Assembly (NCBI GenBank): GCA_001179505.1
Contig: CDMY01000447.1
Span: forward strand, 315,066-379,065
Length of the DNA stretch: 64,000 nt
Origin: Vitrella brassicaformis CCMP3155
Lineage: Eukaryota; Protista; Chromerida
Direction of reading: 5' to 3'
Of this stretch, positions 28,203-47,437 are shown one piece after another (positions within the stretch are counted from its first letter, which is position 1; each line of letters begins with the position of its first letter). The notes below the pieces were generated by a model that saw nothing but the letters and a program-made list of their open reading frames with translations, had not been told where the DNA came from and made no database searches. The position numbers were made by a program, and so were the translations under genes.

Positions 28203-31200
28203 ATGGGTATCCAGGGCCTGTTGAAGGCCTTGGAGGGCGTGCAGCGTGAGGTCCACATCACCGCATTCAAGGGGGAACGAGTTGCCATCGATGTGAGGCG
28301 ACACACGCACACGCGAAAGGACGTTCGTTTCGTGGATGCATATATCTGCCTCTGTGTGCTGGGCGTGTGTGTGATGTGATAGGCTTCGTCTTGGCTCCAT
28401 AAGGTGAGATGGATACACAGAGAGAACCATTGATGACGATTAACCGAGTCGATGGAGGCATGTGTGTGTGTGTGTGAGATGCAGGGTGCCTACAGCTGTG
28501 CCAAGGCGTTGGTATTGGGGGAGCCGACCACCCGACACATCGACTACTGCATCAGGCGAATCGACTCACTCATAGAACTCGGCCTCACACCGGTACACAC
28601 ACACACACACACACCCGGCGGATCTGTCTGGTCGGTCATCCCTTCATATATACTCATTCGCGCAGGTGGTTGTGTTCGACGGTGGTTCGCTGCCCGCCAA
28701 GGCCGAAGAGAATCAGCGGCGGGAACAGTGAGCTCACTCCCTGGGCTGGGGAGGTGTGTTTGTTTTGTGTACTGTCTGTGTTGTAATGGTTGTCTGTCGG
28801 TGTGGTGGTGTGGTGTGGTGTGCGGTGTTCAGGTCCCGTCGTGAGGCCCGTGACAAGGCTAAGGGTCTCATGAAGATGCAAAAGATGGAGGAGGCTCACA
28901 AGGTCAGTCAGTCAGTCAGTCAACCAATGCATTCGCCACACACACGTACTATACACCGACCGAGGCGTTGTGGTTGTGCTGTGTATGTGAATGTGTGTAT
29001 GTGTGTGTGTGTGTGTGTGTTGTGCAGTTCTTCGCCCAGGCCGTGACGATCACTGCCGAGCACGCCCATGAGCTGCTGCTGGTGAGATAGCGATGGGGGA
29101 GGGGAGGTGCATTGCACCATGCATATGGGGTGTGGTGTGTTGGTAGCGTCTGCGTGCCAAGAATATCGAGTTCATTGTAGCACCTTACGAAGCGGACGCA
29201 CAGATGACCTTCTTAGCGGTGAGCCAACCGAACCAAACCCACACAGACAGACAGTGACAGCCGCGCTGCTGCCCGTGGTGGATGGATGTCTTCTGTCTGT
29301 CTGACTGTCTGTCTGTCTGTCTGTCTGTGTGCAGTTGATAGGATGGGTGTCGCTGGTGATCTCTGAGGACTCTGACCTGCTCGTTTACGGATGCCCAAAG
29401 GTACCTACCTACCTGGACGCACGCACGCCGACACACAAAGTGTGTGTGCTCCTGCCTCTGTTGGTTTGGCTCCTTGATGAATATATGAATGCCTTCAGGT
29501 GTTGTACAAGTACGATGAGAGCGGCCGCGGCCGTCTGATCGACCTCAAGGAAATCCCGCAGGCCAGAGACTTCAAGGCACTCGGCAGATACTCACACGGT
29601 CGGTGCTCACACGCACGCGCACACGCATACACACGTGTGCCCGTGGCTGGAGCGTTCTCTGTGTGTCATTGTTCCTTCCCCTCCCTCCCTCCCTCCCTCC
29701 CTCCNNNNNNNNNNNNNNNNNNNNNNNNNNNNNNNNNNNNNNNNNNNNNNNNNNNNNNNNNNNNNNNNNNNNNNNNNNNNNNNNNNNNNNNNNNNNNNNN
29801 NNNNNNNNNNNNNNNNNNNNNNNNNNNNNNNNNNNNNNNNNNNNNNNNNNNNNNNNNNNNNNNNNNNNNNNNNNNNNNNNNNNNNNNNNNNNNNNNNNNN
29901 NNNNNNNNNNNNNNNNNNNNNNNNNNNNNNNNNNNNNNNNNNNNNNNNNNNNNNNNNNNNNNNNNNNNNNNNNNNNNNNNNNNNNNNNNNNNNNNNNNNN
30001 NNNNTTCGTTGATCAGATCTGTTTCAGCAGGTGTGCATCATGGCTGGGTGCGACTACCTCTGCAGCGTCGACAAGGTCGGCATCAAGACCGCTGGCAAAC
30101 TCGCGGGACAGTTCAGGGCAGACGTCGCAAAGGTCAGGGAGGGAGGGAGTGAGGGAATGAGTGTCTGTCTGGGTGACCGATCCGCCCGCCTCCCGCGCAT
30201 CCCTCCTGTGCCCTCTTGTGTGTGTGTGCAGATCATGAAAGCGATGCGTCTTCAGGGTCTGAGTGTGCCACATGACTACGACGTCGGCTACGCGCAGGCC
30301 AAGATGACCTTCGCACACCAAACCGTATACGACCCTAGACACGTACGCGCGTATCCCAAAACCACCACACCATCACCAGGGAGACACCCCTCTCACCCAA
30401 CCCTGCTGCGTCTCGTCTGTGTCCATCAGCAATGCCTGGCTCGCGTGCACCCCATCCCCGACACCCCCTCTCACGGCTTCGACGACATCGACTTCCTCGG
30501 CCCCTGGCTGGCCGACCACATCGCACACGGCATCGCCACTGGAGACCTACACCCACACACACACCAGCCCTTCCCTGCCAACGCCGCACAGCCGCCGCCC
30601 CCAGCCCAGGCAGCCAAGAAGCAGACCAAGCTGCCCTTTCTCCCCATCGGCGACGCACCTGCACCTGCACCTGCACCTGCACCTGCGCCAGCAGCAGCAG
30701 CAGCAGCTGGTGCTGGTGCAGGGGGTCAGGCGAAGGGCAAGAATGACCATCGTCAGAGGCCCAAGGGAGGTGTCAGGAATGGTGTCAAGGGCAGCAGCAA
30801 GGGTGGGGCGTCAGGGAAGCAGCCGAGCATTCTGCAGTGGGCGAGGAAGGAGGACAAGAAGGGTGGTGGAGGTGGCAGGGACGGGGAGGGGGACGACTGC
30901 GAGATCACCGGAGGTAGGCGAGATGGGTCGGATGTGTGTGCCCCGTGCATCGGTGTCTCTGTGCGTCTATCGTTTCAGAGTCTGAGGCTCCGTTAGCTGA
31001 TCTGGGTCGCCGTCTCGGGTTTGACAAGGTGACCTGGGAGAAGGGCATGGGCATCAAGAACACAGCCGCAGTCCGCAACAACAGCAAACCACCAGCACAA
31101 CCACACAAGGACAAGGACAAGGACAGCAACAACCACTACAGCGGCGCCAATCCCCCACCACTGGGAGTTCTCGCCGGGCTCAAGCACAAAGCCAGGATGG

Positions 31201-33641
31201 TCAAGAACAGGAACAACCACACCACAGCCGCAGCAGCGCCCAAGTCACCTCCGCTGCCCCCCTTCAAGCCCGTCTTCATTCACGGCCCTTCCCCTCCCCC
31301 CGACAGCCCGATTGACATCGACGGCCCATCAGCCCGCGAAGGCGTCGCTCTCGCACCCCCACCAGCACGCCCGCTCCTCGCGGCGAAGCACGACCAAGAC
31401 CAGAAGGAGGACAAGGACAAAGACATCGATGCCAGCGGTGAGGGCGGGCGAGTGCGGCGTCCGCTGTTCGGCGGCAAGAAGCCGATGAACGGTCTGAAGC
31501 TGTCAGGGACCAAGGTCAACGCGGACGCCGTGTACTGCTTGTACAACGTGACGATGGATGCGGAGGAGGACGGGCAGGGCGTGGTGGCCAAGATGAAGGC
31601 ATACGCACAGGGCAAATTGCCCACGGCTTTGGGAAAAGGGTGGGAGGGAGGCGGCACACCGAGGGACATGGACGCGACTGAGGAGAAGAAACAGGCCGCC
31701 CACCACCACCAGCAGCAGCAGCAGCAGCAGAAGCGTCCACATGTCGACACGCCACGTGTCCCCCCGGCTGCCCCGCCCCCTCCCGCCAAGAAGCCCTGCC
31801 CTGCCGACTTTAGCGCCTTCATCTATCGCACCCATGACGGCCACAACCTCCACCAGCAGCACCAGCAGCACCAGCCGTCTCGCTTCGGGCCGGCCAGGCA
31901 GCAGCAGCAGCAGCAGCACGAGGGCACGGTGTCACCTGACCATCCCATGCATCAGCATGACGACGATGCATGCGAGCCGATGCCCCAGGAGTGTGATGAT
32001 GGCTGCCAGGTGGAGGACGAGGAGGCCATGATGATGCGAGAGGAGGCGGAGGACGAGGCCATGGAGATGGAGCATGCAGCCGAGATGATGGAGGAGGATG
32101 CCGACATGATGAGGCAGCAGGCCATGATGGTCACAGAGGGGATCATGAGAGACGGAGCCATCGACGAGGAGGCCGTGGTGATGCAGTACAATCGGCCGCT
32201 AGCAGCCAGCGAGCGCGTGGAGGTTCTGGGCAGCTGTCTTGTGGTAGTGAACGACCTGCGGGATCGGCCATTCGGCGACGACGACCCGCCTGAATGGCGG
32301 CAAATCAACTACCGACCCACAAAAGTCGTGGAGACTCTCAAGGTGTACCCAAGCAGCTTGTACCCAAGTCCACCCCCCCGCAGGGCCCGGCCCGAGGAGA
32401 GCCCCTCATCACGCCCTGACGGCCTGCCATGCTCCCCGGCCAAACTCGTCTCCCATTACACCGGCAAGGCACTGGCCGCCCTTCAGGCCAAGGACATCGC
32501 CCCCCGCGCCCGCCCCCACAACCTCTTCCAGCAGGCACTGAGGGAACGCCGCGCAGAGGAGCTGGGCGAACAGCAAGACACTGACACCTTCGCCGTGCCC
32601 CACAGCGACCGTATCGACCTTCTCGACAGCTTCGGCTACCGCCCCCCCATCGGAGGCAGTCGGAGCGGGCGCGGTCTGTTCGCTGGCGCACTTGTGGCGC
32701 GCAGGCGTGAGGTAGAGGAGGAGAGCATGAGTGGGGACCGGCTGTGGTACGGCCCGGCGGAGAACATGCGCCAGGGGGACAGGCAGCTGGAGAGGGCCGC
32801 CCAGCTCGACATGGCATCCGGTGTAGAGGGTGAGACGCCTGACGATGCCACCGCAGCCACGCCACACTATGATGGGCATCAGCAGCAGCAGATGATGATG
32901 GAGGGCGGCGAAGAGCCCATGGCAGAAGAGGCGGGTCAGGAGGAGGCCGGCGGAGGACAGGACATCGCAGTGGACGGGCAGGAGCAGCCACGGCTGGCAG
33001 CGGCGGACCGTCCAGGTGGCGAGTCGGAGGCCGTGCTTGACATCGACGTGTCGATAGACCATGACAAGGGGGTGGATGCCAATGGCGGTGGTGCTGATGG
33101 TGCTGTGCTGGAGGAGTACGATGCCGTCCGCTGCCACAGCGGCCAGCGCAACGGCACTGACGACACCCACCCTCTACAGCCCGCCCCTCCCGTAGCAGAT
33201 GAAGGCAAGAAGGACGATCGGCCTGCATCCGGCCCTCCCATTGACGACAACAACCCCCCTGCAGCAGCACCAGCAGCAGCATCAGCAGCAGCCACCTCTG
33301 CAGCCCCCAAGGAGGCCCGTGCAGCCAAGGACAAGAAGGCCCCACCACCAGCAGCATCGGCCAAGGTCGAGAAAGAGCAGCCGGTTATTGGTGGCGGTGG
33401 CGAGAGGGGTGGCGGCACGAAGGGCGCTGCGAGGGAGGGGCGTGGGCGTAAGGAGAGGGTGGTGGACAAGCAGGCCGATCATCAAGACGATGAACAAGGT
33501 CAGGTCACTCAGGCGGCCAAGTGGCCCCACGTGCGCTCATTGTAATAATGTTGGTGCATGTGTGTGTCAGGTATGGTTGTGTCGTCTGCGGCATTCCTGG
33601 ACAAGCTGCAGTCGTTTGTGTACAAGGCCAAGGCCAAGTGA
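28203..33641 (+). CDS. EXO1: Exonuclease 1 (XPG/RAD2 family) with a ~900-aa low-complexity C-terminal region
   Basis: MGIQGLL, AID|ASSWLHK|GAYSC (21-nt micro-exon), VVFDG, APYEADAQ, SEDSDLLVYG, CIMAGCDYL, GIKTA, FAHQTVYDP. Terminal exon ends FLDKLQSFVYKAKAK*. Spans the N gap. Confidence 0.93.
29705..30004. other. Assembly gap (300 N) inside EXO1
   Basis: Run of N following a (CCCT)n microsatellite. Confidence 1.
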
Positions 33642-33963
33642 CGCGCTGCCTTGGTTGCTCCAAACGAACGTAGACAGCTAGTACTGACATGACTGACATG
33701 CACTTTGCGGCGACGTCTACTGTGCATGAGACCATTCGTTGCGGCCAGCGAGTGAGAGAGAGAGAGAGAGAGAGAGAATGGGGGGACCAACTGTGTGTTT
33801 AGAAACAGACGATCGCTGCCTGCCTGCCTGCCTGCCTGGCCTGACCCGCCCTCTTCTCTGTTGTCCATACCTCTGTCCATATTATTATCTGTCTGTACGC
33901 AGACATCCGTGTGTGTGTGTGTGCTTTGATGGGTGGATGCATGGATGGATGGATTGACGCGTC

Positions 33964-34091
33964 GCTGTGTTTTGTGTGCCATTGCGGGTCCGGCGCGAGA
34001 TGCCTTCTAAGCTGCAGGCGATGCAGGCGATAGAAGGCTGCAGCTTAGAATGCCGCTCATGCAGGACCGACTGCGGGGCACAAGACACGGC
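33964..34091 (+). ncRNA. Long in-register fold-back hairpin between convergent EXO1 and AP1S 3' ends
   Basis: Perfect 13-bp core TTCTAAGCTGCAG (34005-34017) / CTGCAGCTTAGAA (34038-34050), extended outward about 40 more positions with symmetric mismatches and G-U pairs. Confidence 0.45.
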
Positions 34092-34354
34092 ACGTGGCGG
34101 TAGAGCCGATGGATGGATGGATGGACGGAGTCGCGTGACTGAGGCAATGAGACGCCTGTGCCCGCTATGATGAATGAATGAGCGGATGAATGAGTTAAAT
34201 CGACCAAAACAAAATCGTCTGGATGGCGTGGCGTAGACCGTATACACAGCACGTCAGTCAGTCAACCGGCAGGGCAGCACCTCTGCCTGCCTCTACCTAC
34301 GTTGCCCATTCTTGTCAGTCAGGCGGTTGTTCAGTCAGTCAGTCAGTCAGTCAG

Positions 34355-35054
34355 TCAGAAGACTGTGGTTTTCTTGGCAGCTGCGGCGTCTTTGCCCTCC
34401 TCCATCATTTGGTCCTGGGCCGCCACCACCCGCAGCACCGTCTTCTTGCTGCTCTCCTGCAGCTCACCAGATATCAACAACTCGTCCAGTATGTAATACG
34501 CCTGTTTGCAAAGACACCACACCAACACACATCCTGTGTGTGTAATACTGCCAATGGCCTGCCCTGCCCTGCTGTGGGCGTGTGTAGCGTGCCTTGCCTT
34601 GTGGAAGTTGAATATGAGGTCGAGTTCGCAGACGTTGCCGAAGTACCTGTCGAGTATCTCGACAAAGTGGTGGATCACCTCCAGTGTGATCAGCTCGTTG
34701 TCGTCCTTGTCGACGCACGCCACAAAGTACAAACTCGCATACCTACACACAGATAGACACTCACACAGTCAGACAGACAGACAGACGGACAGAAAGCCGC
34801 TGTGTGTCAATATAATGTGCTGGGCGTCTCCTGGAATGAGTGGAACGCTCAGCTGGCCTGCGCACGCACCGTTTGAAGACGAGTTTGTAGTCCCTCCACT
34901 CGAGGAAGTTGCATAGCTTGGGCGGCCTGTTGAGCACCAGCTGCGCTATCTCCCGGATGGTCTTCTGCCGCTCCTTCTGCGGCTGAGGAACAAACCACTT
35001 GGCCAGACGCGTCTTGCCCTGCCGAGATATCAGCAGAATGAACTGAATCGTCAT
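34355..35054 (-). CDS. AP1S: AP-1 adaptor complex sigma subunit
   Basis: [63 protein letters not shown]|AYYILDE; 3 exons, second intron GC-AG (34597-34502). Confidence 0.97.
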
Positions 35055-35372
35055 CTCTCTCCACGGCCGCGCTGCGCTGCGCTGCGATGCTGATCTTCAA
35101 CTGATCTTCAACTCAATGTCATGCGGATCAGATCTATCTGACCACAAAGGCAGCAGTGTGGCACACAAGGTGTCGGATCTGCTGCATCTGGCTGAGGGCG
35201 ATCTTCACGCGAGCTTTTTGCAAGCTTGAAGTTTCTGGGCGAGAAAGGCACGATGGATGGGTGCCGTGTGCTGTGCATGCTCGAGCACTGATTGAATCTG
35301 GTGTCGGATCCTTCCGCCAGGCGCGGCTTTGATCAAATAGGCTTTGATCTGCAATTGTCTGCCATACCGCCG

Positions 35373-38276
35373 ATGAACGTGCTCAGCTACCTCTGGCGCG
35401 GCAAGGACGGTGGTAAGGCGTCGCCGTCTGGCCGGGCTGCAGACGCCGCCCCTTTGCGAACAGAGTCCGCTGGCGCTGATGTCATCGCATCCGGTGAGGA
35501 TGTGGCGCCCGACACCTTCCTGATCAAGTCGATAAGCGAGCCGGGATACACCGGCAAGCTGGACCGGGCGGCGCTCGACAGAGGGGAGGCAGGGGAGCCG
35601 GCCAAGGGAGATGCAGAGGTCAGGGAGGGAGGGAGGCAATGGGTTGGGCTGCTCGATGGGGTGGGTGTGACGTGTGTTGTGTTTGCTCGACAGGTTCCTT
35701 CGTCTCCCGGTGCGCCAGGGCCGTCGTCGGCGAGTGCGGCGGCCGCTGCTGCTGGTGCGGTGCCCAGCACGCCCTCCCCTGTGCGTGATGCTCATTGCCA
35801 CCCTGACATAGCTGTATTGGAGCCGCAGCCTGCCCTGCCGGCATACCCTGCCGCACAGGGGGCGGCCGCTGCTGCTGCTGCTGCCGCCGCTGGACCGCCG
35901 GTACACACCCACTCACTCACTCACTCAGGCATGCAGTTAGCTCAGCGCACGGCATTGGAATGGATGTGTGTGATTGGTTGGTTTTTGTTCAGGGTGTGGG
36001 TCGGAATGGCGGCATAGACGACTTCAGCAGCATATCGACCATCATATCTGAGTTGCAGGAGGTCGACGACTGCAGAAACCCCCTAGAGAGGCAGGTCGGT
36101 CGATATGGCGCCAGCACATTCCTGGCAGTGCACATACAGACAGACAGACACAGACGGATGGGGTGTGCATGTCTATGTCTGTCTGTGTGGTGTGGTATGC
36201 GTGTGTGCAGGTGCAGCAGAAGCTGGAGAAGCAGAACAAGCGCCGGTTTCTGCAGAAGGGCATCCGCTTCAACATCCTCATCGTCGGCGAGAGCAGATCC
36301 GGCAAAACCACACTCCGCAAAAAGATGTTCGACTCGGTACGTACCCAAATGAATGACTGACTCCTGTGTGCAGTGCATCGATCCATCCATCCATTGGCAA
36401 CATGTGTGTGTGTGTGTGTGTGTGTGCAGTGGCATTTGATGGAGGAGCGCGACTCGACGTGCGGCCGCGAGTACATCTACCAGATCAGCGAGCAGCGCTC
36501 CGTCATACAAGGTAGGTGACAGAAGAGAATATGAGAGAGACAGCTGGATCAGACCAACACACACACACTTGTATGTGTGTGTGGCTGTCGTGTGGGTGTG
36601 GTGTGTGCAGTGTCAGTGGTGGAGGGTGGGTGTTGCGACTTCCTGGTCACCCACTGTCAGCTCAAGCTGGTCGAGTACATCAACAGGAAGAAACACAGAC
36701 ACGGCGGACCTGACGAACGGGTCAATCAGGGAGGGATGCAATGCCCGTCGGCGGCGAGGCATACAGACAGACCCGCACCCATCTCATCTCACCTCTCTCT
36801 CTCTTTGCGTGTGTGCGTGTGTTGGTTCTGTTGCTGTTGTCGCTGTGTGTCCATCAGGTGCACGTGTGTGTGTATGTGTTGGACCCGACGCAGGACCGTA
36901 TCCCCGGCCAGCAGGCCGCCCTCATGCAGAAGCTGTCCACTGTCGTCAACCTCGTACCCGTCATCGGGAAGGTCAGCGAACCGAGACCCATTGATTGACT
37001 GACACAGCGAGCGGATCGACGTATTCTCACGCTGATACGTACGGGGGTGTGTGTGTGCGTGTGTTTAGTGCGACACTGTGGACCCTGATGTGCTGCGGCA
37101 GCGGCGCGACCGATTACAGAAGGAATTTGAAGCATACAAGATCAAAGTAAGCGGACACTTTGACCTCCCCTCGACATAATTCTGATCCTCCCCCTCCCTC
37201 TCCCCTCCCGTCCGCAATCACTCTGTCTGTCTACTCATCCCATCACATCAGCTGTTCGACGACTGGGCGTCTCCCCTGGTGGCGGCAGCGCTCAACACCC
37301 CCTCCCCCACCCCATCACACCCCTCCCCCGCCCCATCGCCCACACACCCCGCACCCACCACACCACACGGGCCCCACATACCCACGGCAGCACAGCCGGC
37401 ACTCACGGCACCGGTGGCACCCGTGCCCGAGGTGCCCCACCCACAGTGCTCAGCCGACGAGAGTGCGAGTGCTGCCGGCGACCAGGCGGCCGGTGGCGGT
37501 GCTGGGGCCAAGAATGGGGGAGCGGGTGGGAACGGCGAGGAGCAGAGGCCCTCCTCGGCGTCGTGGGGGCAGAGGTGAGAATGAATGAATCTCTTGGTTA
37601 GGTGTGGGCTGGTTACGTGTCATCAATGTGTGTGTTGGTGCAGGATGCGTCAGTCGATTGTGCAGAGCCCGCTGCTGGTGGACTGTCACCTGTCGACGGA
37701 GGAGCAAGACGAGAGGTACAGCACAAACGAACGACCCACGCGATCACGGCTGGCTCGATCGGGCGTGTGACACGGAGGGGAGCTTGTTCTGTGCGGTGCG
37801 CGCACCAGGTATCAGTTGCCGCGTTTTGACAACGTGCCGCCCACGTCGCCCGACTTCCTGCGGATGCTCCTCATCGAGGCCGCCGCACTCCTGCTCATTG
37901 ATCGTAAGCGCACGACGCAGAGACCACCACGAAGAGGGGTTGAGGTGTTCGGCGCCGCATTGGTGTAATGATGTGTATAGGCACCAAGTCACTATTCTAC
38001 ACGCCATTCTACGACGATTGGGAGGTCAGCAGCAGAGCACCACACACGCAAGGCAACACATAACACAGACAGACAGACAGACGTCCAATGTGCGTCGCAG
38101 CCGTCCTTGCAATCGTTTGTCGGCCTGTCTATCTGTCTATCTGTCTGTCTGTGTGTCTGTATTGTCAGCGTCGCAACGGTCGTCGCGCGCTGGTGGGTCA
38201 GTTGCGGCAGATGGGCCTGGTGTCGGCCGTGGCCGTGGGGGTCGGCGCACTGCTGCTAAGAGTCTCATCCAGGTAG
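35373..38276 (+). CDS. Divergent septin-like P-loop GTPase with C-terminal transmembrane tail
   Basis: KGIRFNILIVGESRSGKTT (G1), DERVHVCVYVLDP, LSTVVNLVPVIGKCDT (G4), DFLRMLLIE, RTKSLFYTPFYDDW occur in septin order. G3 position reads VSVVEGGCCD. Terminal hydrophobic MGLVSAVAVGVGALLL followed by RVSSR*. Confidence 0.78.
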
Positions 38277-39319
38277 ACAGACAGGGAGGTAGGGAGGTAG
38301 CTGGCGAGATAGTGAATTCATGCGTTCGTTCGTTCGTTGGTTGGTTGGTTCATTCGTTGACGCACTCATGCCATGCCCTTTTGAGGAGGACAGAAAGGAC
38401 TGACTGACCGGAGGAGAAGTAATCTGAGCACTTTTTGCGCCGGTCCATGTCTGTGTTTGTGCGTGTGTGGTCCACATTTTTTCCCTGTGTGTTTTTGTCA
38501 GCCAAAGGAGGGGACAGGGATTGTCGTCTCGTGTCGCGCTGTGTACCATACCCAGCCAGATACACACGCACATCGGGGGGCCGAACCCCCCGAATGCCAT
38601 CCATTGATATCCATCCATGGGGGCAGTGCAGTGAGGCGTTGCTTAGCTGTCGTTTCTCTGTCGTGTTGGATGTCAGCCGCGTACGGGAGTGCTGGTCTGT
38701 CTGTCTGCCTGTCTGTCTGTCTGTGCGTCTGTCGGGCTGTCTGTCCGTCGGAGGGATCGGTCACTGGAGTGTGGTGTGGCCACGTGGCGTGGCGTGGCGT
38801 GGCGTGGCGTGTCGGTCAAGTCAGGACAGATCAGGTGAGGTGAGCTTAGCGCGAAAGCGTGTGACGTTTTTTGTTTGTAGACGTAGGCCGGCTGTCGATC
38901 GACTGTATGTATGTGTGTGTCAGTACACGGCATGTCTCTGCATCTGTGTAGAATAAGTCACCCCCCGCCTGGCCTGCACTCTCTCTCCATCACGCAGTCT
39001 GCTACCTGTCTGTCCGTCTGACTGACCATTGGACACTCATCTCTCCCCACCTACACTCAGCACGCTGGGATGCATGGCGTGTGGCCATCGATGGATGGAT
39101 GTCTGCTTGCAGTGAGTGCACTGACTGGGTTGAGACTGACTGCAGTTAGCTAATCCGCCCATCGACACACCACACCACACAATACAGACAGACGTACACA
39201 CAACAAAAGATGACGTGCATCAAATCACTCACTCGTGAGACACGAGGTCAAATGTCCACTCACGCAGCCCCAGTCACGCAGCTGATTTCTGTCGTCATAC
39301 GTGTGTGTGTCGACGATGC

Positions 39320-45502: not shown

Positions 45503-47437
45503 TTAGTGCCGTTCCAACACTGCTGATCCCGACCACACACCATTGCCCCCCTCCCGGCTCAGGTACCCTTTCACGTCAAAACCGACAAAGGCCTCACGGA
45601 ACCCATCAGCAGTCGGCCTGCCTCCCGCTCCCGCCCCGCCCCCCCTACCAGACCACGACAGAGACACCTTCTGTGCACCCCTCACATGGGCCACCTCGCC
45701 AACGTAGGCGTGCAGCGGGCTTGGCAGGGCCTGAGCATCGTGCATACTGATGGAGATCTCGCTGATGGAAGGCATCCGTGGGTCGTCGAAGAGCCCCAGC
45801 TGCTGATTCCCGCACATGCCGAGCCGAAGGTGGTCGATGGTGACTTTCTCGAGGCGGCTCACTGGCAAGGCGACGAGGCATCTCTGGACCAGCGCGCAAT
45901 TGGACCTGTCAAACAGCACACGCTCCACTCGTGGGGCCTGGAATCGACACACATACATCAGCTCGACAGTATCGTCATGTGTATCTATCGGCCGCCGTAC
46001 CGAAGCAAAGAAGCGGCTGACGATATCAGCGTTGTCGGGATCGACCAGCCGGAAGACCTTCATTGACGTCGCTGTGGGGAAGCTGGGTGGGGCGTCAGGG
46101 CGGGTGACGCATGGAGGGAAGACACCGTCATTCTGCTGGTCGCATTCCACCGTCACCTCGTCAGCAGAGGCGAAACGGAACCCACGAAAGGCGCGACCAA
46201 GACTCTCAAAGTCGTCCTCCTGCTCTTCGATAGAGGCGTCGAAATCCTGTTGATTGAAATGATCAGTCACATGAAAGAAAAAGTAAAGAGGGAGGGAAGT
46301 ATATGAATGAAACACGAGACAGCTGTGACGAACGAACTGACCTGCTCGATAGCGACGCTCTTGGCCGCTGCAGCCGAGCGCCGTATGAACGCGTTCAGGG
46401 CCTGATCGGCCGGGGTCGATGTTAGCGGATAGAGGAAGAAGTCACTGCTGAAATGCGTGACCTGCATTTAATCGCATGGCATGTACAAGAAGACAGGCAC
46501 AACAAGACGTTTAAAGCATTCGAACGAAGACTGCAGCTCAGCTCCAAACATACGGGTGATGATTTGATTCCTCCATGGCCGTGTGTGCACATATGATTGA
46601 TCTGCGTACCTCAAGTGCGAAGCCGGCAGCACAGGAATCCATCACGAGTGCGTGGAGCTCGCGAACGTTCTGCATGCTGCTCAGCGCCTCCACCCACTCC
46701 CCTTGGAAATGCACCCGCAGTTTCTTCAGCCGCACACGACTGGCCCGGAGCAGCGTCTTCAGCCCGTTCAGGTCAGCTGCCGTGCACGCAAACAGATACA
46801 GCTCCCCGAGGCTCTCGAGAACGACGAGGTTGGGCACTTGCTTGAGCGAGCCGATCAGCTCGTCGACGACCAGACCGTCTTGGATGAAATGTCGGAGGTT
46901 TCTCGTCTCGCTCACCCACTTGGCGGGCGATGCGTCGCTCGGCGGCACGATGGAGGCAAACTCAAACAATTGCAGGACAGGGAGCACCCATCGTCGCTCC
47001 TCCGCCATCGCCAGCCAGACGTTAGTGTCCCCATCGATGCGCACCCTCTCCAGCCGTGGGAAGATCTGCCTCCTCCTCGTCGTCGACACTCCAGTCGAGG
47101 TCACTCGGTGCCGCGCACTTGTGATCTCGAGGGACCGCAGTGCAGCAGCAGTGCCTTCCAGCAGCACAATGAGGCCGGCCACATTCCCCTCAGAAACGCT
47201 GATGGACGCCCTCGCTGAATGGCACATTCGGCTGGCCAGAAGGGAGGCGCCAGCGGGAGTAAGCCGGCTCCATGCTGACGTTTCTGCAGGGACGACGGTG
47301 AGATGTTGATATGCAGAGGGAGAGCCCGCAGCCGCACGAAACAGGCGACAGACGAGGGAGAGCCGGAATGACTCGAGGGTCGTCAGGTGGCCGAAGATAC
47401 CTCGGACACATTCAACGGGCAGGTCAGCGAACACCAT
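45503..47437 (-). CDS. F-box-like protein with LRR-like body, 3 exons
   Basis: N-terminal MVFADLPVECVRGIFGHLTTLESFRLSLVCRLFR fits the F-box consensus (LP.E....IF..L......L..VCR.F); LRxLxI-type repeats downstream. Confidence 0.75.

What the first reader, a model, noticed from the sequence alone, without database searches (positions are those of the whole stretch)
35373..38276. Divergent tail-anchored septin-like GTPase in a probable chromerid
Seen: the spliced product carries septin hallmarks in the right order: FNILIVGESRSGKTT, RVHVCVYVL, VNLVPVIGKCDT, DFLRMLLI, TKSLFY..Y. The G3 DxPG motif appears replaced by VEGGC. A Pro/Ala-rich insert (37280-37575) precedes the septin-unique element, there is no C-terminal coiled coil, and the protein ends in a ~16-aa hydrophobic helix plus a short basic tail. 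Known: apicomplexan parasites are generally described as lacking septins, while ciliates and some algae have them, some with TM segments. Inference: a single membrane-anchored, possibly hydrolysis-impaired septin retained in a photosynthetic sister lineage could be an undescribed organelle-surface scaffold.
Basis: partly seen in the sequence, partly recalled or inferred. Interest (0 to 1): 0.75.

Follow-up and report, generated by a model that had tools for sequence, protein, structure and literature searches.

The report
Tail-anchored divergent septin in Vitrella
This is a real, strongly conserved gene of the alga Vitrella brassicaformis for a membrane-anchored septin relative that has lost its GTP-hydrolysis switch, and the same protein also exists in Toxoplasma, Perkinsus and a parasitic dinoflagellate, groups usually said to lack septins.

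Summary
The window is Vitrella brassicaformis CCMP3155 (100% identical to GCA_001179505.1 CDMY01000447.1), and the public annotation already calls a 568-residue product there with a Pfam Septin hit.

A syntenic relative in a metagenome confirms every splice site and gives dN/dS of 0.013-0.026. Septin membership is solid: Pfam Septin scores 77 bits against a cut-off of 26, a family profile hits 44 PDB septins before any other GTPase, and a confident AlphaFold model has septins as its top 50 Foldseek hits. G1 and G4 are intact. DxxG and about 10 residues of switch II are missing. The protein ends in a 16-aa transmembrane helix followed by RVSSR.

The evolutionary framing is wrong. Clear orthologues exist in Toxoplasma (TGME49_309770, named "septin" in some records), Neospora, Besnoitia, Cystoisospora, Perkinsus and Hematodinium. 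They form a clade with 200/200 bootstrap support, and all lack G3.

My best reading is a nucleotide-binding but non-switching scaffold anchored on the cytosolic face of an organelle, possibly the mitochondrial outer membrane. That part is inferred, not shown. I class it as a new variant of a known kind, of moderate interest.

The parts
35373..38276 (+). Whole gene: 13 exons, 568-aa tail-anchored divergent septin
   Evidence: The spliced ORF is open and all introns are GT-AG. The public annotation calls a 568-residue product with a Septin hit that ends at 38276. Comparison with L002 validates the exons.
35373..35618 (+). Exon 1: N-terminal aromatic motif MNVLSYLWRG, followed by a low-complexity linker
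   Evidence: Similar N-termini occur in the orthologues: MFPVFWRTRR in coccidia and MFSYFFG in Perkinsus. The exon is 77% identical to L002, with indels in multiples of 3.
35694..35900 (+). Exon 2: Ala/Pro-rich linker, probably disordered
   Evidence: The exon is 75% identical to L002 with in-frame indels. A GCT/GCC triplet repeat lies at 35865-35892.
35993..36094 (+). Exon 3: family-specific motif DDFSSISTIIS (36017-36049)
   Evidence: The motif is conserved as D[DE][FL]SS.S in coccidia, Perkinsus, the Hematodinium-type proteins and environmental members.
36211..36336 (+). Exon 4: polybasic KLEKQNKRRF (36220-36249) and G1 P-loop GESRSGKT (36286-36309)
   Evidence: This aligns to the septin polybasic region and G1, consensus GE.G.GKSTL. 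The exon is 94% identical to L002.
36430..36511 (+). Exon 5: switch I region up to strand beta3
   Evidence: Shown by the alignment. The exon is 94% identical to L002.
36611..36720 (+). Exon 6: degenerate G3, VSVVEGGCC in place of the septin DTPGFGD, then helix alpha2. Switch II is about 10 residues shorter than in canonical septins.
   Evidence: The HMMER alignment to Cdc10 places VVE-GG under VIDTPG. The 58-sequence alignment shows the deletion in every family member. In the AlphaFold model strand 103-109 joins helix 114-131 through 4 residues.
36858..36971 (+). Exon 7: septin S2-type motif (DER)VHVCVYVLDP and the first half of G4, NLVPVIGK
   Evidence: The canonical consensus is D.RVH.CLYFI.P, and D, H and P are near-invariant across all 58 aligned sequences.
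37069..37146 (+). Exon 8: end of G4 (K)CDT, then helix alpha4
   Evidence: GKCD corresponds to the septin AKAD, the xKxD form of G4.
37252..37574 (+). Exon 9: end of the G-domain helix (LFDDW) and a roughly 90-aa Pro/Ala/Gly-rich insert
   Evidence: Every family member has a non-homologous insert at this position. The first 54 codons show 0 amino-acid changes against 15 synonymous differences relative to L002.
37644..37715 (+). Exon 10: strand SPLLVDC, equivalent to the septin PFAVVGS
   Evidence: Shown by the alignment. Model confidence (pLDDT) here is 88-98.
37809..37903 (+). Exon 11: modified septin-unique element, RYQLPRFDNVPPTSPDFLRMLLIEAAALLLID
   Evidence: This is the most conserved block of the family. 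It aligns to the septin R.YPWG.VEVEN..H.DF..LR..L, with WG replaced by RF and a roughly 6-aa deletion.
37981..38024 (+). Exon 12: RTKSLFYTPFYDDWE, equivalent to the septin alpha6 T....YE.YR
   Evidence: Shown.
38169..38276 (+). Exon 13: basic juxtamembrane RRNGRR, transmembrane helix MGLVSAVAVGVGALLL (38211-38258), tail RVSSR and the stop codon
   Evidence: It is the top hydropathy peak of the protein. It is 15/20 identical to the Toxoplasma helix. It is modelled as part of one long helix, residues 283-323 of the 324-aa construct.

Best explanation
The gene encodes the Vitrella brassicaformis member of a distinct septin clade. The clade is found across Myzozoa: chromerids, coccidian apicomplexans, perkinsids and syndinean dinoflagellates.

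Shown here:
- It is a real gene under very strong purifying selection.
- Its G domain is a septin by sequence and by predicted fold.
- It keeps the polybasic region, the P-loop (G1) and the guanine-specificity motif (G4).
- DxxG (G3) and most of switch II are deleted.
- The septin-unique element is remodelled but highly conserved within the clade.
- There is no coiled coil.
- The protein ends in one C-terminal transmembrane helix with a 5-residue basic tail.

Inferred:
- The protein is inserted after translation as a tail-anchored protein, with the whole septin domain facing the cytosol.
- It binds guanine nucleotide but cannot perform the gamma-phosphate-dependent switch or efficient hydrolysis. 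It would therefore act as a static, membrane-fixed scaffold or docking subunit rather than a cycling GTPase.
- Its conserved surfaces (the remodelled G-interface/septin-unique block, and a Gly/Ala/Ser-rich small-residue face of the transmembrane helix) mediate self-association or binding of a conserved partner.
- The moderately hydrophobic helix, flanked by basic residues on both sides, points most to the mitochondrial outer membrane. This is the weakest step.
For: Real gene:
- All 12 introns and their GT/AG sites are conserved in the syntenic relative L002. Exons are 75-96% identical and introns 33-52%.
- dN/dS is 0.013 for exons 3-8 and 0.026 for exons 10-13, at dS of about 0.5.
- The public annotation gives a product of the same length.

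Septin:
- Pfam Septin scores 77.4 bits against a cut-off of 26.2, and the next family (GTP_EFTU) scores 18 bits.
- A phmmer search of PDB returns 44 septin sequences among 46 matches at E<=1; the only other match, a Rab-type small GTPase, appears at E about 0.3.
- The family profile hits 44 septins at E from 7e-21 to 7e-8. The first non-septin is Der at 0.019, and no Toc34 or GIMAP appears.
- The AlphaFold model has pLDDT 85.9 and pTM 0.81, and its top 50 Foldseek PDB hits are all septins.

Motif states:
- G1 and G4 are intact. G3 and switch II are deleted in all 12 family rows of the alignment.
- In the model, beta3 is joined to alpha2 by only 4 residues.

Clade:
- The best hits (E from 1e-60 to 1e-35) are Besnoitia, Hammondia/Toxoplasma, Perkinsus and environmental proteins. 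The best clearly canonical septins score about 1e-13.
- NJ bootstrap support for the clade is 200/200 against 42 canonical septins.
- Hematodinium membership rests.

Scaffold rather than enzyme:
- The Hematodinium-type subclade has lost both the P-loop and G4. Coccidia have AMSD in place of xKxD.
- Both groups still keep the septin-unique block and the transmembrane helix.

Tail anchor:
- The only strong hydropathy peak lies in the last 21 residues.
- All but two of the orthologue models that reach the C-terminus end the same way. The exceptions are the Cystoisospora-type models P0016 and P0095.
- The helix is 15/20 identical between Vitrella and Toxoplasma, against about 43% identity overall. 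This implies sequence-specific contacts within the membrane.

Precedent for septins on organelle surfaces comes from two papers. PMC11238149 reports TM domains in septin Groups 6A and 7. Preprint 10.64898/2026.03.28.715002 describes a septin on the chloroplast envelope and cites mitochondrial septins in ciliates and animals.
Against: - There is no localisation, expression or biochemical data for any member. No paper on TGME49_309770 was found in the library, and it is absent from the held hyperLOPIT supplements.
- The choice of membrane rests only on general rules for tail-anchor targeting, recalled from my own knowledge.
- In Vitrella, G1 and G4 are under very strong constraint. Glu259-Gly-Gly might partly replace DxxG, so some hydrolysis cannot be excluded.
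- The AlphaFold alignment included canonical septins, which pulls the model towards their fold.
- The tree is neighbour-joining on 265 columns and is not rooted with outgroup GTPases.
- Only the best 150 of 566 hits were listed, so the apparent absence from Plasmodium, Cryptosporidium or Chromera is not established.
Confidence: 0.55

Rival explanations
1. The same protein and the same tail anchor, but on a different membrane: the ER or nuclear envelope, the Golgi, the pellicle/inner membrane complex, or the outermost (ER-like) plastid membrane. There it would act as a tether or docking factor rather than a mitochondrial scaffold.
For: The coccidian orthologues carry a roughly 200-aa insertion directly before the transmembrane helix. 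Its heptad-like, charged sequence (IRQIEMQIRRIQQQIELVQRDQREKQAKVLQRQLERQ) resembles that of tail-anchored tethers. Hydropathy of 1.9-2.1 is also compatible with ER insertion. A green-algal septin sits on the chloroplast envelope (preprint 10.64898/2026.03.28.715002).
Against: The family is kept in Hematodinium, a dinoflagellate reported to have lost its plastid entirely (Gornik et al. 2015, from my own knowledge, not checked here). That argues against a plastid-specific role. Basic residues on both sides of a short Gly/Ala-rich helix are more typical of mitochondrial outer-membrane anchors (general knowledge).
Confidence: 0.35
2. It is still an active, cycling GTPase. Glu259 takes over the Mg2+/water role of the G3 aspartate, one of the two following glycines contacts the gamma-phosphate, and dimerisation supplies catalysis.
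For: G1 (GESRSGKT) and G4 (GKCD) are intact and almost invariant against the relative L002, with dN/dS of 0.013. A Glu occupies the G3 Asp column in most family members.
Against: The Gly-Gly is specific to Vitrella. Coccidia have TEASH and Perkinsus TESMD/TESSD, with no glycine. Switch II is about 10 residues shorter in all members. Whole subclades have lost G1 and/or G4 while keeping the rest of the protein. The conserved function therefore does not need a GTPase cycle.
Confidence: 0.2
3. It is not a septin but another tail-anchored member of the wider septin-like GTPase superclass (TOC34/TOC159, AIG1/GIMAP) that merely resembles septins.
For: TOC34 is also a tail-anchored GTPase on an organelle surface. 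A recent preprint places TOC GTPases inside the septin radiation.
Against: No AIG1/TOC family appears in the Pfam scan even at E<=1. No TOC or GIMAP chain appears among the PDB sequence hits at E<=10. All top 50 structural hits are septins. Septin-specific features are present: the pre-G1 polybasic region, the S2 motif D.RVH.C.Y...P, NxxPVIxKxD, and the septin-unique DF..LR..L / T....Y..Y elements.
Confidence: 0.03
4. The reading frame is an artefact: a decaying pseudogene or a chance splice model.
Against: dN/dS is 0.013-0.026 at dS 0.5, splice sites are conserved, and indels are in-frame only. The Hematodinium orthologue comes from a transcriptome. The public annotation gives an identical product length.
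Confidence: 0.01

Closest known systems
Database orthologues: Toxoplasma gondii TGME49_309770 (named 'septin' in several strain records and in UniProt), Hammondia HHA_309770, Neospora, Besnoitia BESB_070330, Cystoisospora suis 'septin', Perkinsus marinus PMAR023062, P. olseni KAF4749270, Hematodinium GEMP01016243
   Same: They share the architecture in the same order: the D[DE][FL]SS.S motif, polybasic KLE[KR]Q.K, the G domain without DxxG, a variable insert, the PRF[DE]-FLR block and a C-terminal transmembrane helix. With the window protein they form one clade with 200/200 support.
   Different: The coccidian proteins are about 1,700 aa, with an N-terminal extension of about 870 aa, a charged heptad-like insertion before the helix, and G4 changed to AMSD. 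The Hematodinium-type proteins (about 410 aa) have lost both the P-loop and G4. Vitrella and Perkinsus olseni keep both G1 and G4. None has been studied experimentally in the papers I could search.
Canonical septins (Pfam PF00735; for example human SEPT2/3/7 and yeast Cdc10)
   Same: They share the fold, the polybasic region before G1, the P-loop, the S2 motif, the NxxPVIxKxD form of G4, and the alpha6 elements of the septin-unique region.
   Different: Here DxxG and about 10 residues of switch II are missing. WG of the septin-unique element is replaced by RF, with a roughly 6-aa deletion. Pfam aligns only profile positions 1-179 of 280. There is no coiled coil. The membrane anchor is covalent, in place of the amphipathic-helix and polybasic peripheral binding of canonical septins.
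Non-opisthokont septins with predicted transmembrane domains (Groups 6A and 7 of Delic et al. 2024, PMC11238149; ciliate septins)
   Same: They are septins with a hydrophobic C-terminal segment and no coiled coil, often the single septin of the organism.
   Different: That study required intact G1, G3 and G4 motifs for inclusion. It searched the Vitrella, Chromera, Toxoplasma and Plasmodium proteomes, but no Vitrella, Chromera or Perkinsus entry appears in its sequence tables. Its only myzozoan entry is an orphan 4484-aa Symbiodinium protein. The present clade lacks G3, so it is not one of those groups.
Chlamydomonas SEP1 on the chloroplast envelope, and mitochondrial septins of ciliates and animals
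   Same: They are septins that work on the cytosolic face of a bacterium-derived organelle (preprint 10.64898/2026.03.28.715002).
   Different: SEP1 is a very active GTPase with an arginine finger and forms filaments and rings. The present clade has no switch II, and its localisation is unknown.
Catalytically inactive or nucleotide-free septin subunits (the SEPT6 group; yeast Cdc3, Cdc11, Shs1)
   Same: They set a precedent for septin subunits that bind nucleotide without hydrolysing it and serve structurally. This is from my own knowledge, and PMC11238149 discusses the loss of the catalytic Thr and arginine finger.
   Different: Those subunits keep DxxG and switch II and work inside hetero-oligomers with active partners. 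Here the whole G3/switch II element is gone, and no canonical septin partner has been reported in these lineages.
TOC34/TOC33 tail-anchored plastid import GTPases
   Same: They are tail-anchored GTPases related to septins, exposed on an organelle surface.
   Different: No sequence or structural match to TOC/AIG1 families was detected. TOC34 keeps a working GTPase cycle.

Membership tests
Septin (Pfam PF00735) | Score above the curated Pfam gathering threshold | tested here: met
   77.4 bits against a cut-off of 26.2, E = 1.4e-21. Only profile positions 1-179 of 280 are aligned. 5 of 9 family sequences in A1 match Septin.
Septin (Pfam PF00735) | Septin G-domain fold | tested here: met
   The AlphaFold model has pLDDT 85.9 and pTM 0.81. 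All top 50 Foldseek PDB hits are septins, with E from 6e-12 to 2e-10 and TM-score 0.50-0.72 normalised by target length. Caveat: the input alignment contained canonical septins.
Septin (Pfam PF00735) | G1 P-loop GxxxxGK[ST] | tested here: met
   GESRSGKT at residues 211-218.
Septin (Pfam PF00735) | G3 DxxG (DTPG) and switch II | tested here: not met
   VVEGGCC stands in place of DTPGFGD, and about 10 residues are deleted. This holds for all 12 family rows. In the model a 4-residue link joins beta3 to alpha2.
Septin (Pfam PF00735) | G4 xKxD (AKAD type) within NxxPVIxKxD | tested here: met
   NLVPVIGKCDT at residues 322-332.
Septin (Pfam PF00735) | Septin motif S2, DxR[VI]Hxxx[YF][FIL]xxP | tested here: met
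   DERVHVCVYVLDP. D, H and P are at least 90% conserved across all 58 aligned sequences.
Septin (Pfam PF00735) | Septin-unique element with the YPWG (S4) and H.DF..LR motifs | tested here: inconclusive
   RYQLPRFDNVPPTSPDFLRMLL aligns to R.YPWG.VEVEN..H.DF..LR..L. However, WG is replaced by RF, the conserved His by Pro, and about 6 residues are missing. Pfam does not align this part.
Septin (Pfam PF00735) | Polybasic region immediately before the G domain | tested here: met
   KLEKQNKRRFLQKGIRFN, conserved across the family.
Septin (Pfam PF00735) | Assembly into oligomers or filaments through G and NC interfaces | not testable with these tools
   This needs purified protein or imaging. Only a monomer could be modelled.
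Tail-anchored membrane protein | A single transmembrane helix within about 30 residues of the C-terminus, and no N-terminal signal peptide or other transmembrane segment | tested here: met
   The top hydropathy peak is at residues 549-565 of 568 (KD 2.06). The next peaks (1.69, 1.43, 1.42) lie in buried elements of the G domain. The N-terminus, MNVLSYLWRGKDGGKASPSG, is not hydrophobic. No dedicated TM or signal-peptide predictor was available.
Tail-anchored membrane protein | Post-translational insertion with the N-terminal domain in the cytosol | not testable with these tools
   This requires a protease-protection or reporter experiment.
TOC34 / AIG1 / GIMAP GTPases | Match to AIG1/TOC family profiles or structures | tested here: not met
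   No such family appears in the Pfam scan at E<=1. None appears among the PDB sequence hits at E<=10 or the top 50 structural hits.
Myzozoan tail-anchored septin clade (defined here) | The D[DE][FL]SS.S motif, G3/switch II deletion, the P.PRF[DE]..P..S..FLR block and a C-terminal helix with a small-residue face | tested here: met
   All four features are present in the window protein and in the coccidian, Perkinsus, Hematodinium-type and environmental members. Clade support is 200/200.

The most novel reading that the evidence does not exclude
This clade is an undescribed major septin group, ancestral to Myzozoa, in which the GTPase switch was deleted and the protein was fixed to a membrane by a tail anchor. 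It would work as a septin scaffold independent of a nucleotide cycle, on mitochondria or another organelle. Its presence in Toxoplasma would overturn the textbook statement that apicomplexans have no septins. It would also offer a genetically tractable system for asking what septins do on organelle membranes.
Probability: 0.4. Interest if true: 0.7.

Novelty: new variant of a known kind. Interest (0 to 1): 0.55.

Why it matters
Reviews of apicomplexan cell division list septins as absent from Toxoplasma and Plasmodium (PMC8089483). The most recent septin phylogeny surveyed chromerid and apicomplexan proteomes and reported none from them (PMC11238149).

The evidence here shows a well-supported septin clade shared by chromerids, coccidia, perkinsids and a syndinean dinoflagellate. 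It has been noticed only by automatic annotation. The clade combines two rare features: a covalent membrane anchor, and complete loss of G3/switch II. Nucleotide-binding motifs then decay stepwise in some lineages. This makes it a natural experiment on which septin functions need a GTPase cycle.

Because an orthologue exists in Toxoplasma, where tagging and conditional depletion are routine, the proposed ancestral link between septins and organelle surfaces becomes directly testable in alveolates.

Tried and rejected
- **Missed G3 exon.** I looked for an intact DxxG exon hidden in introns 4-6. The septin alignment runs through the exon 5/6 junction without a gap on the query side. The relative L002 has the same exon borders. 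The alternative acceptor 6 nt downstream at exon 6 only removes Val-Ser. Rejected.
- **Missing G4 in Perkinsus marinus.** No G4 was found in locus L001 by tblastn or regex. This proved to be an annotation gap, because the P. olseni protein has VSIITKVD.
- **Word-index searches.** The word-index homology search found only one hit with the single sequence. Absence in that tool therefore means little. The exhaustive phmmer search was the informative one.
- **'Gene not annotated in Vitrella'.** I held this idea because no Vitrella protein came back from any protein search. One search refuted it: a 568-residue Septin-hit product is called at the locus.
- **First tree attempts.** One timed out and one gave invalid distances. 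Only one search is used.
- **Literature on TGME49_309770.** Nothing was found in main texts or in the held supplements of two Toxoplasma proteome/CRISPR papers. Wloga 2008 and Sidik 2016 are not held. The animal-septin transmembrane preprint does not mention alveolates.
- **Rfam.** The scan of the window found nothing.


Full report

Yes. Reading 35000-38700 in three frames and joining 13 exons gives an open 1707-nt CDS of 568 aa. The exons are 35373-35618, 35694-35900, 35993-36094, 36211-36336, 36430-36511, 36611-36720, 36858-36971, 37069-37146, 37252-37574, 37644-37715, 37809-37903, 37981-38024 and 38169-38276, and all introns are GT-AG.

It contains every quoted string: FNILIVGESRSGKTT, RVHVCVYVL, VNLVPVIGKCDT, DFLRMLLI, TKSLFYTPFY and VEGGC. 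The Pro/Ala/Gly-rich insert is the body of exon 9. The protein ends in MGLVSAVAVGVGALLL followed by RVSSR, which is the strongest hydropathy peak of the protein (KD 2.06 over 17 residues).

**2. Is the gene model right, given that no RNA-seq was available?**

A 119-aa ORF fragment with 86% identity to the query, from an ENA metagenome assembly (P0007), led to contig L002 (ERZ893784 k147_4266832). L002 is syntenic with window 30.2-38.9 kb at 66-88% nucleotide identity.

Aligned to the gene, the 13 exons are 75-96% identical, with gaps only in multiples of three. The 12 introns are 33-52% identical and full of indels. Every GT and AG is conserved at the homologous position. The orthologous protein is almost identical, for example VVEGGRC against VVEGGCC.

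Nei-Gojobori dN/dS is 0.013 for exons 3-8 and 0.026 for exons 10-13, at dS of about 0.5. Even the low-complexity insert shows no amino-acid change across its first 54 codons, against 15 synonymous differences. This is a functional gene, and no alternative exon carries an intact DxxG.

**3. Which organism?**

A concatenated probe of three neighbouring ORFs hit a protein of Vitrella brassicaformis CCMP3155 (P0170). Its exons are identical to the window. The genomic locus fetched for it, L003 (NCBI GCA_001179505.1, CDMY01000447.1), is 100% identical over 21,725 bases to window 35503-57227 on the reverse strand.

The 'probable chromerid' is therefore Vitrella itself. The same look-up shows that the public annotation already calls a gene ending at window 38276, with a 568-residue product and a precomputed Pfam Septin hit. 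My model has the same length and the same end.

**4. What family?**

- Pfam Septin scores 77.4 bits against a cut-off of 26.2. The next best family, GTP_EFTU, scores 18 bits, and no AIG1/TOC family appears.
- A phmmer search of PDB returns 44 septin sequences among 46 matches at E<=1, led by Cdc10 at 2e-16; the only other match, a Rab-type small GTPase, appears at E about 0.3.
- A profile of the family (A1) hits 44 septin sequences at E from 7e-21 to 7e-8. The first non-septin, Der, comes at 0.019.
- An AlphaFold model of the core (N-terminal 151 residues and the insert removed, 58-sequence alignment) has mean pLDDT 85.9 and pTM 0.81. Its top 50 Foldseek PDB matches are all septins.

**5. State of the catalytic motifs (alignment A2)**

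- The pre-G1 polybasic stretch (KLEKQNKRRF), G1 (GESRSGKT), the S2 motif (DERVHVCVYVLDP) and G4 (NLVPVIGKCDT) match the septin consensus.
- At G3 the consensus DT.GFGD is replaced by EGGCCD, and the following roughly 10 residues of switch II are absent.
- In the model, strand 103-109 is joined to helix 114-131 by four residues.
- The strand PFAVVGS is SPLLVDC.
- The septin-unique R.YPWG.VEVEN..H.DF..LR..L is RYQLPRFDNVPPTSPDFLRMLL. WG has become RF, the conserved His has become Pro, and about 6 residues are missing.
- There is no coiled coil. The last helix runs straight into the transmembrane segment.

**6. It is not a chromerid oddity but a myzozoan clade.**

The exhaustive phmmer search of 1.84 billion representatives gave 566 hits. 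The eight hits at E<=1e-30 are all members of this group (seven orthologues and one ORF fragment of the relative), while the best clearly canonical septins score about 1e-13. The top hits have the same architecture:

- Besnoitia BESB_070330.
- Hammondia HHA_309770, in the same 90% cluster as Toxoplasma TGME49_309770. The latter is named 'septin' in several strain records and in UniProt.
- Neospora.
- Cystoisospora suis 'septin'.
- Perkinsus olseni and P. marinus.
- Several environmental proteins.

A profile search added a compact subclade of about 410 aa. It includes EukProt GEMP01016243 (P0166, sequence), and GEMP01 is the Hematodinium transcriptome according to PMC6642578.

In a neighbour-joining analysis of 265 columns, the 11 full-length members form a clade in 200 of 200 bootstraps against 42 canonical septins. 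Coccidia, Perkinsus and the Hematodinium-type group each receive 200/200. The position of Vitrella inside the clade is unresolved.

All members lack DxxG and share the switch II deletion. G1 is kept everywhere except in the Hematodinium-type group. G4 is kept in Vitrella, P. olseni and environmental P0004. It is AMSD in coccidia and is lost in the Hematodinium-type group.

The best-conserved parts are the block PL.VD....QD.RY..PRF[DE]G.PP.SP.FLR..L.E...LL and the transmembrane helix. The helix is 15/20 identical between Vitrella and Toxoplasma, although the proteins are only about 43% identical overall.

**7. What is known in the literature?**

- A 2021 review lists septins as 'NA' for both Plasmodium and Toxoplasma (PMC8089483).
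- Delic et al. 2024 (PMC11238149) searched the Vitrella, Chromera, Toxoplasma and Plasmodium proteomes, among others. They required G1, G3 and G4 motifs.
- Their sequence tables hold no Vitrella, Chromera or Perkinsus entry. They report only an orphan 4484-aa Symbiodinium protein from Myzozoa.
- They do describe transmembrane domains in septin Groups 6A and 7.
- I found no paper on TGME49_309770. It does not appear in the held supplements of the hyperLOPIT atlas or of a follow-up CRISPR screen.

The clade therefore seems known only to automatic annotation.

**8. Mechanism**

Shown: a septin G domain with nucleotide-binding motifs but without the gamma-phosphate sensor and switch II; a strongly constrained, remodelled septin-unique/G-interface region; a C-terminal helix that is conserved in sequence.

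Inferred:
- (a) Tail-anchored insertion, with the septin domain in the cytosol.
- (b) Nucleotide binding without switching or efficient hydrolysis in Vitrella.
- (c) A scaffold or docking role that does not depend on a GTPase cycle. The basis is that lineages which lost G1 and/or G4 keep everything else.
- (d) Helix-helix contacts through the small-residue face (SAVAVGVGA).
- (e) The mitochondrial outer membrane as the most likely site. The helix is short, moderately hydrophobic and flanked by basic residues. Ciliate and animal septins act on mitochondria (cited in preprint 10.64898/2026.03.28.715002). The family also persists in Hematodinium, which is reported to lack a plastid (my own knowledge, not checked here).

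Step (e) is the weakest. ER, Golgi, pellicle or plastid-periphery localisation remains quite possible. The charged heptad-like insertion before the helix in coccidia would also suit a tether.

**9. Limits**

- There is no transcript, localisation or biochemical evidence.
- The structure alignment included canonical septins.
- The tree is distance-based and has no outgroup.
- Only the best 150 hits of the exhaustive search were visible. Absence from Chromera, Plasmodium, Cryptosporidium and others is therefore not established, and neither is 'single septin'.

**10. Verdict**

The molecular reading (divergent, tail-anchored, G3-less septin in a chromerid) is supported. The evolutionary framing (a septin retained only outside Apicomplexa, and undescribed) is not supported, because coccidian, perkinsid and dinoflagellate orthologues exist and the genes already carry automatic septin labels.

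I class it as a new variant of a known kind. Interest is moderate, mainly because the Toxoplasma orthologue makes the function testable.

Noticed in passing
L002 1-9400 (ENA ERZ893784, contig k147_4266832), compared with window 30212-38920: A metagenome contig from an unsampled close relative of Vitrella brassicaformis. It is syntenic across three genes (an XPG/EXO1-like ORF, a clathrin-adaptor sigma subunit and the septin), with coding dS of about 0.5. It suggests a second Vitrella-like species in the environment.
   Followed up: partly
L001 6001-12861 (Perkinsus marinus GG681874.1): The annotated model PMAR023062 (P0001) lacks the G4 exon that P. olseni has (VSIITKVD) and reads unrelated sequence instead. 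The locus also contains 100-N gaps. The P. olseni model KAF4749270 (P0005) is fused to an upstream ubiquitin-conjugating E2 gene; the septin part starts at its internal MFSYFFG, residue 133.
   Followed up: partly
P0008 compared with P0163 (Neospora), and P0016 / P0095 (Cystoisospora-type): The Neospora model P0008 skips the switch I to G3 region that is present in P0163. The Cystoisospora-type models lack the same region and also the C-terminal transmembrane helix. These are probably gene-model errors rather than biology.
   Followed up: no
window 35373-35402, and the orthologue N-termini: A short aromatic N-terminal motif is shared by distant members: MNVLSYLWRG in Vitrella, MFPVFWRTRR in coccidia and MFSYFFG in Perkinsus. 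It is absent from the Hematodinium-type proteins. Its function is unknown.
   Followed up: no
window 36017-36049: The conserved acidic/serine motif DDFSSISTIIS resembles an LC3/ATG8-interacting core ([FWY]xx[ILV] preceded by acidic residues). However, Perkinsus and the Hematodinium-type members have Leu in place of Phe, so this is only a speculative lead.
   Followed up: no
window 36608-36616: Exon 6 has tandem acceptors 6 nt apart (CAG at 36608-36610 and CAG at 36614-36616). Using the downstream one would remove Val-Ser in frame without touching the VVEGG segment.
   Followed up: no
window 29705-30004: A 300-N assembly gap lies just upstream of (5' to) an XPG/EXO1-like exon (IMAGCDYL...).
   Followed up: no
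window 35000-38700 (for example 36403-36426, 36132-36150, 38065-38082, 38125-38160, 38323-38358): The introns and flanks are packed with short (TG)n, (ACAG)n, (CTGT)n and (CGTT)n arrays. Four acceptors share the form GTGTGTGCAG. This looks like a genome-wide intron signature of Vitrella rather than something specific to this gene.
   Followed up: partly
window 45503-47227 (minus strand): P0170, an uncharacterised Vitrella protein with no Pfam hit and no homologue outside Vitrella in the search, occupies a block of slightly lower G+C (0.54 at 42-44 kb). Long, nearly intron-free ORFs surround it.
   Followed up: no
window 35503-57227 (gene list of L003): The annotated neighbours of the septin are a PA-domain vacuolar sorting receptor, two proteins without domains, a GPI2 homologue, a NUMOD3-hit protein and a DnaJ. 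Nothing in the neighbourhood hints at the septin's function.
   Followed up: partly
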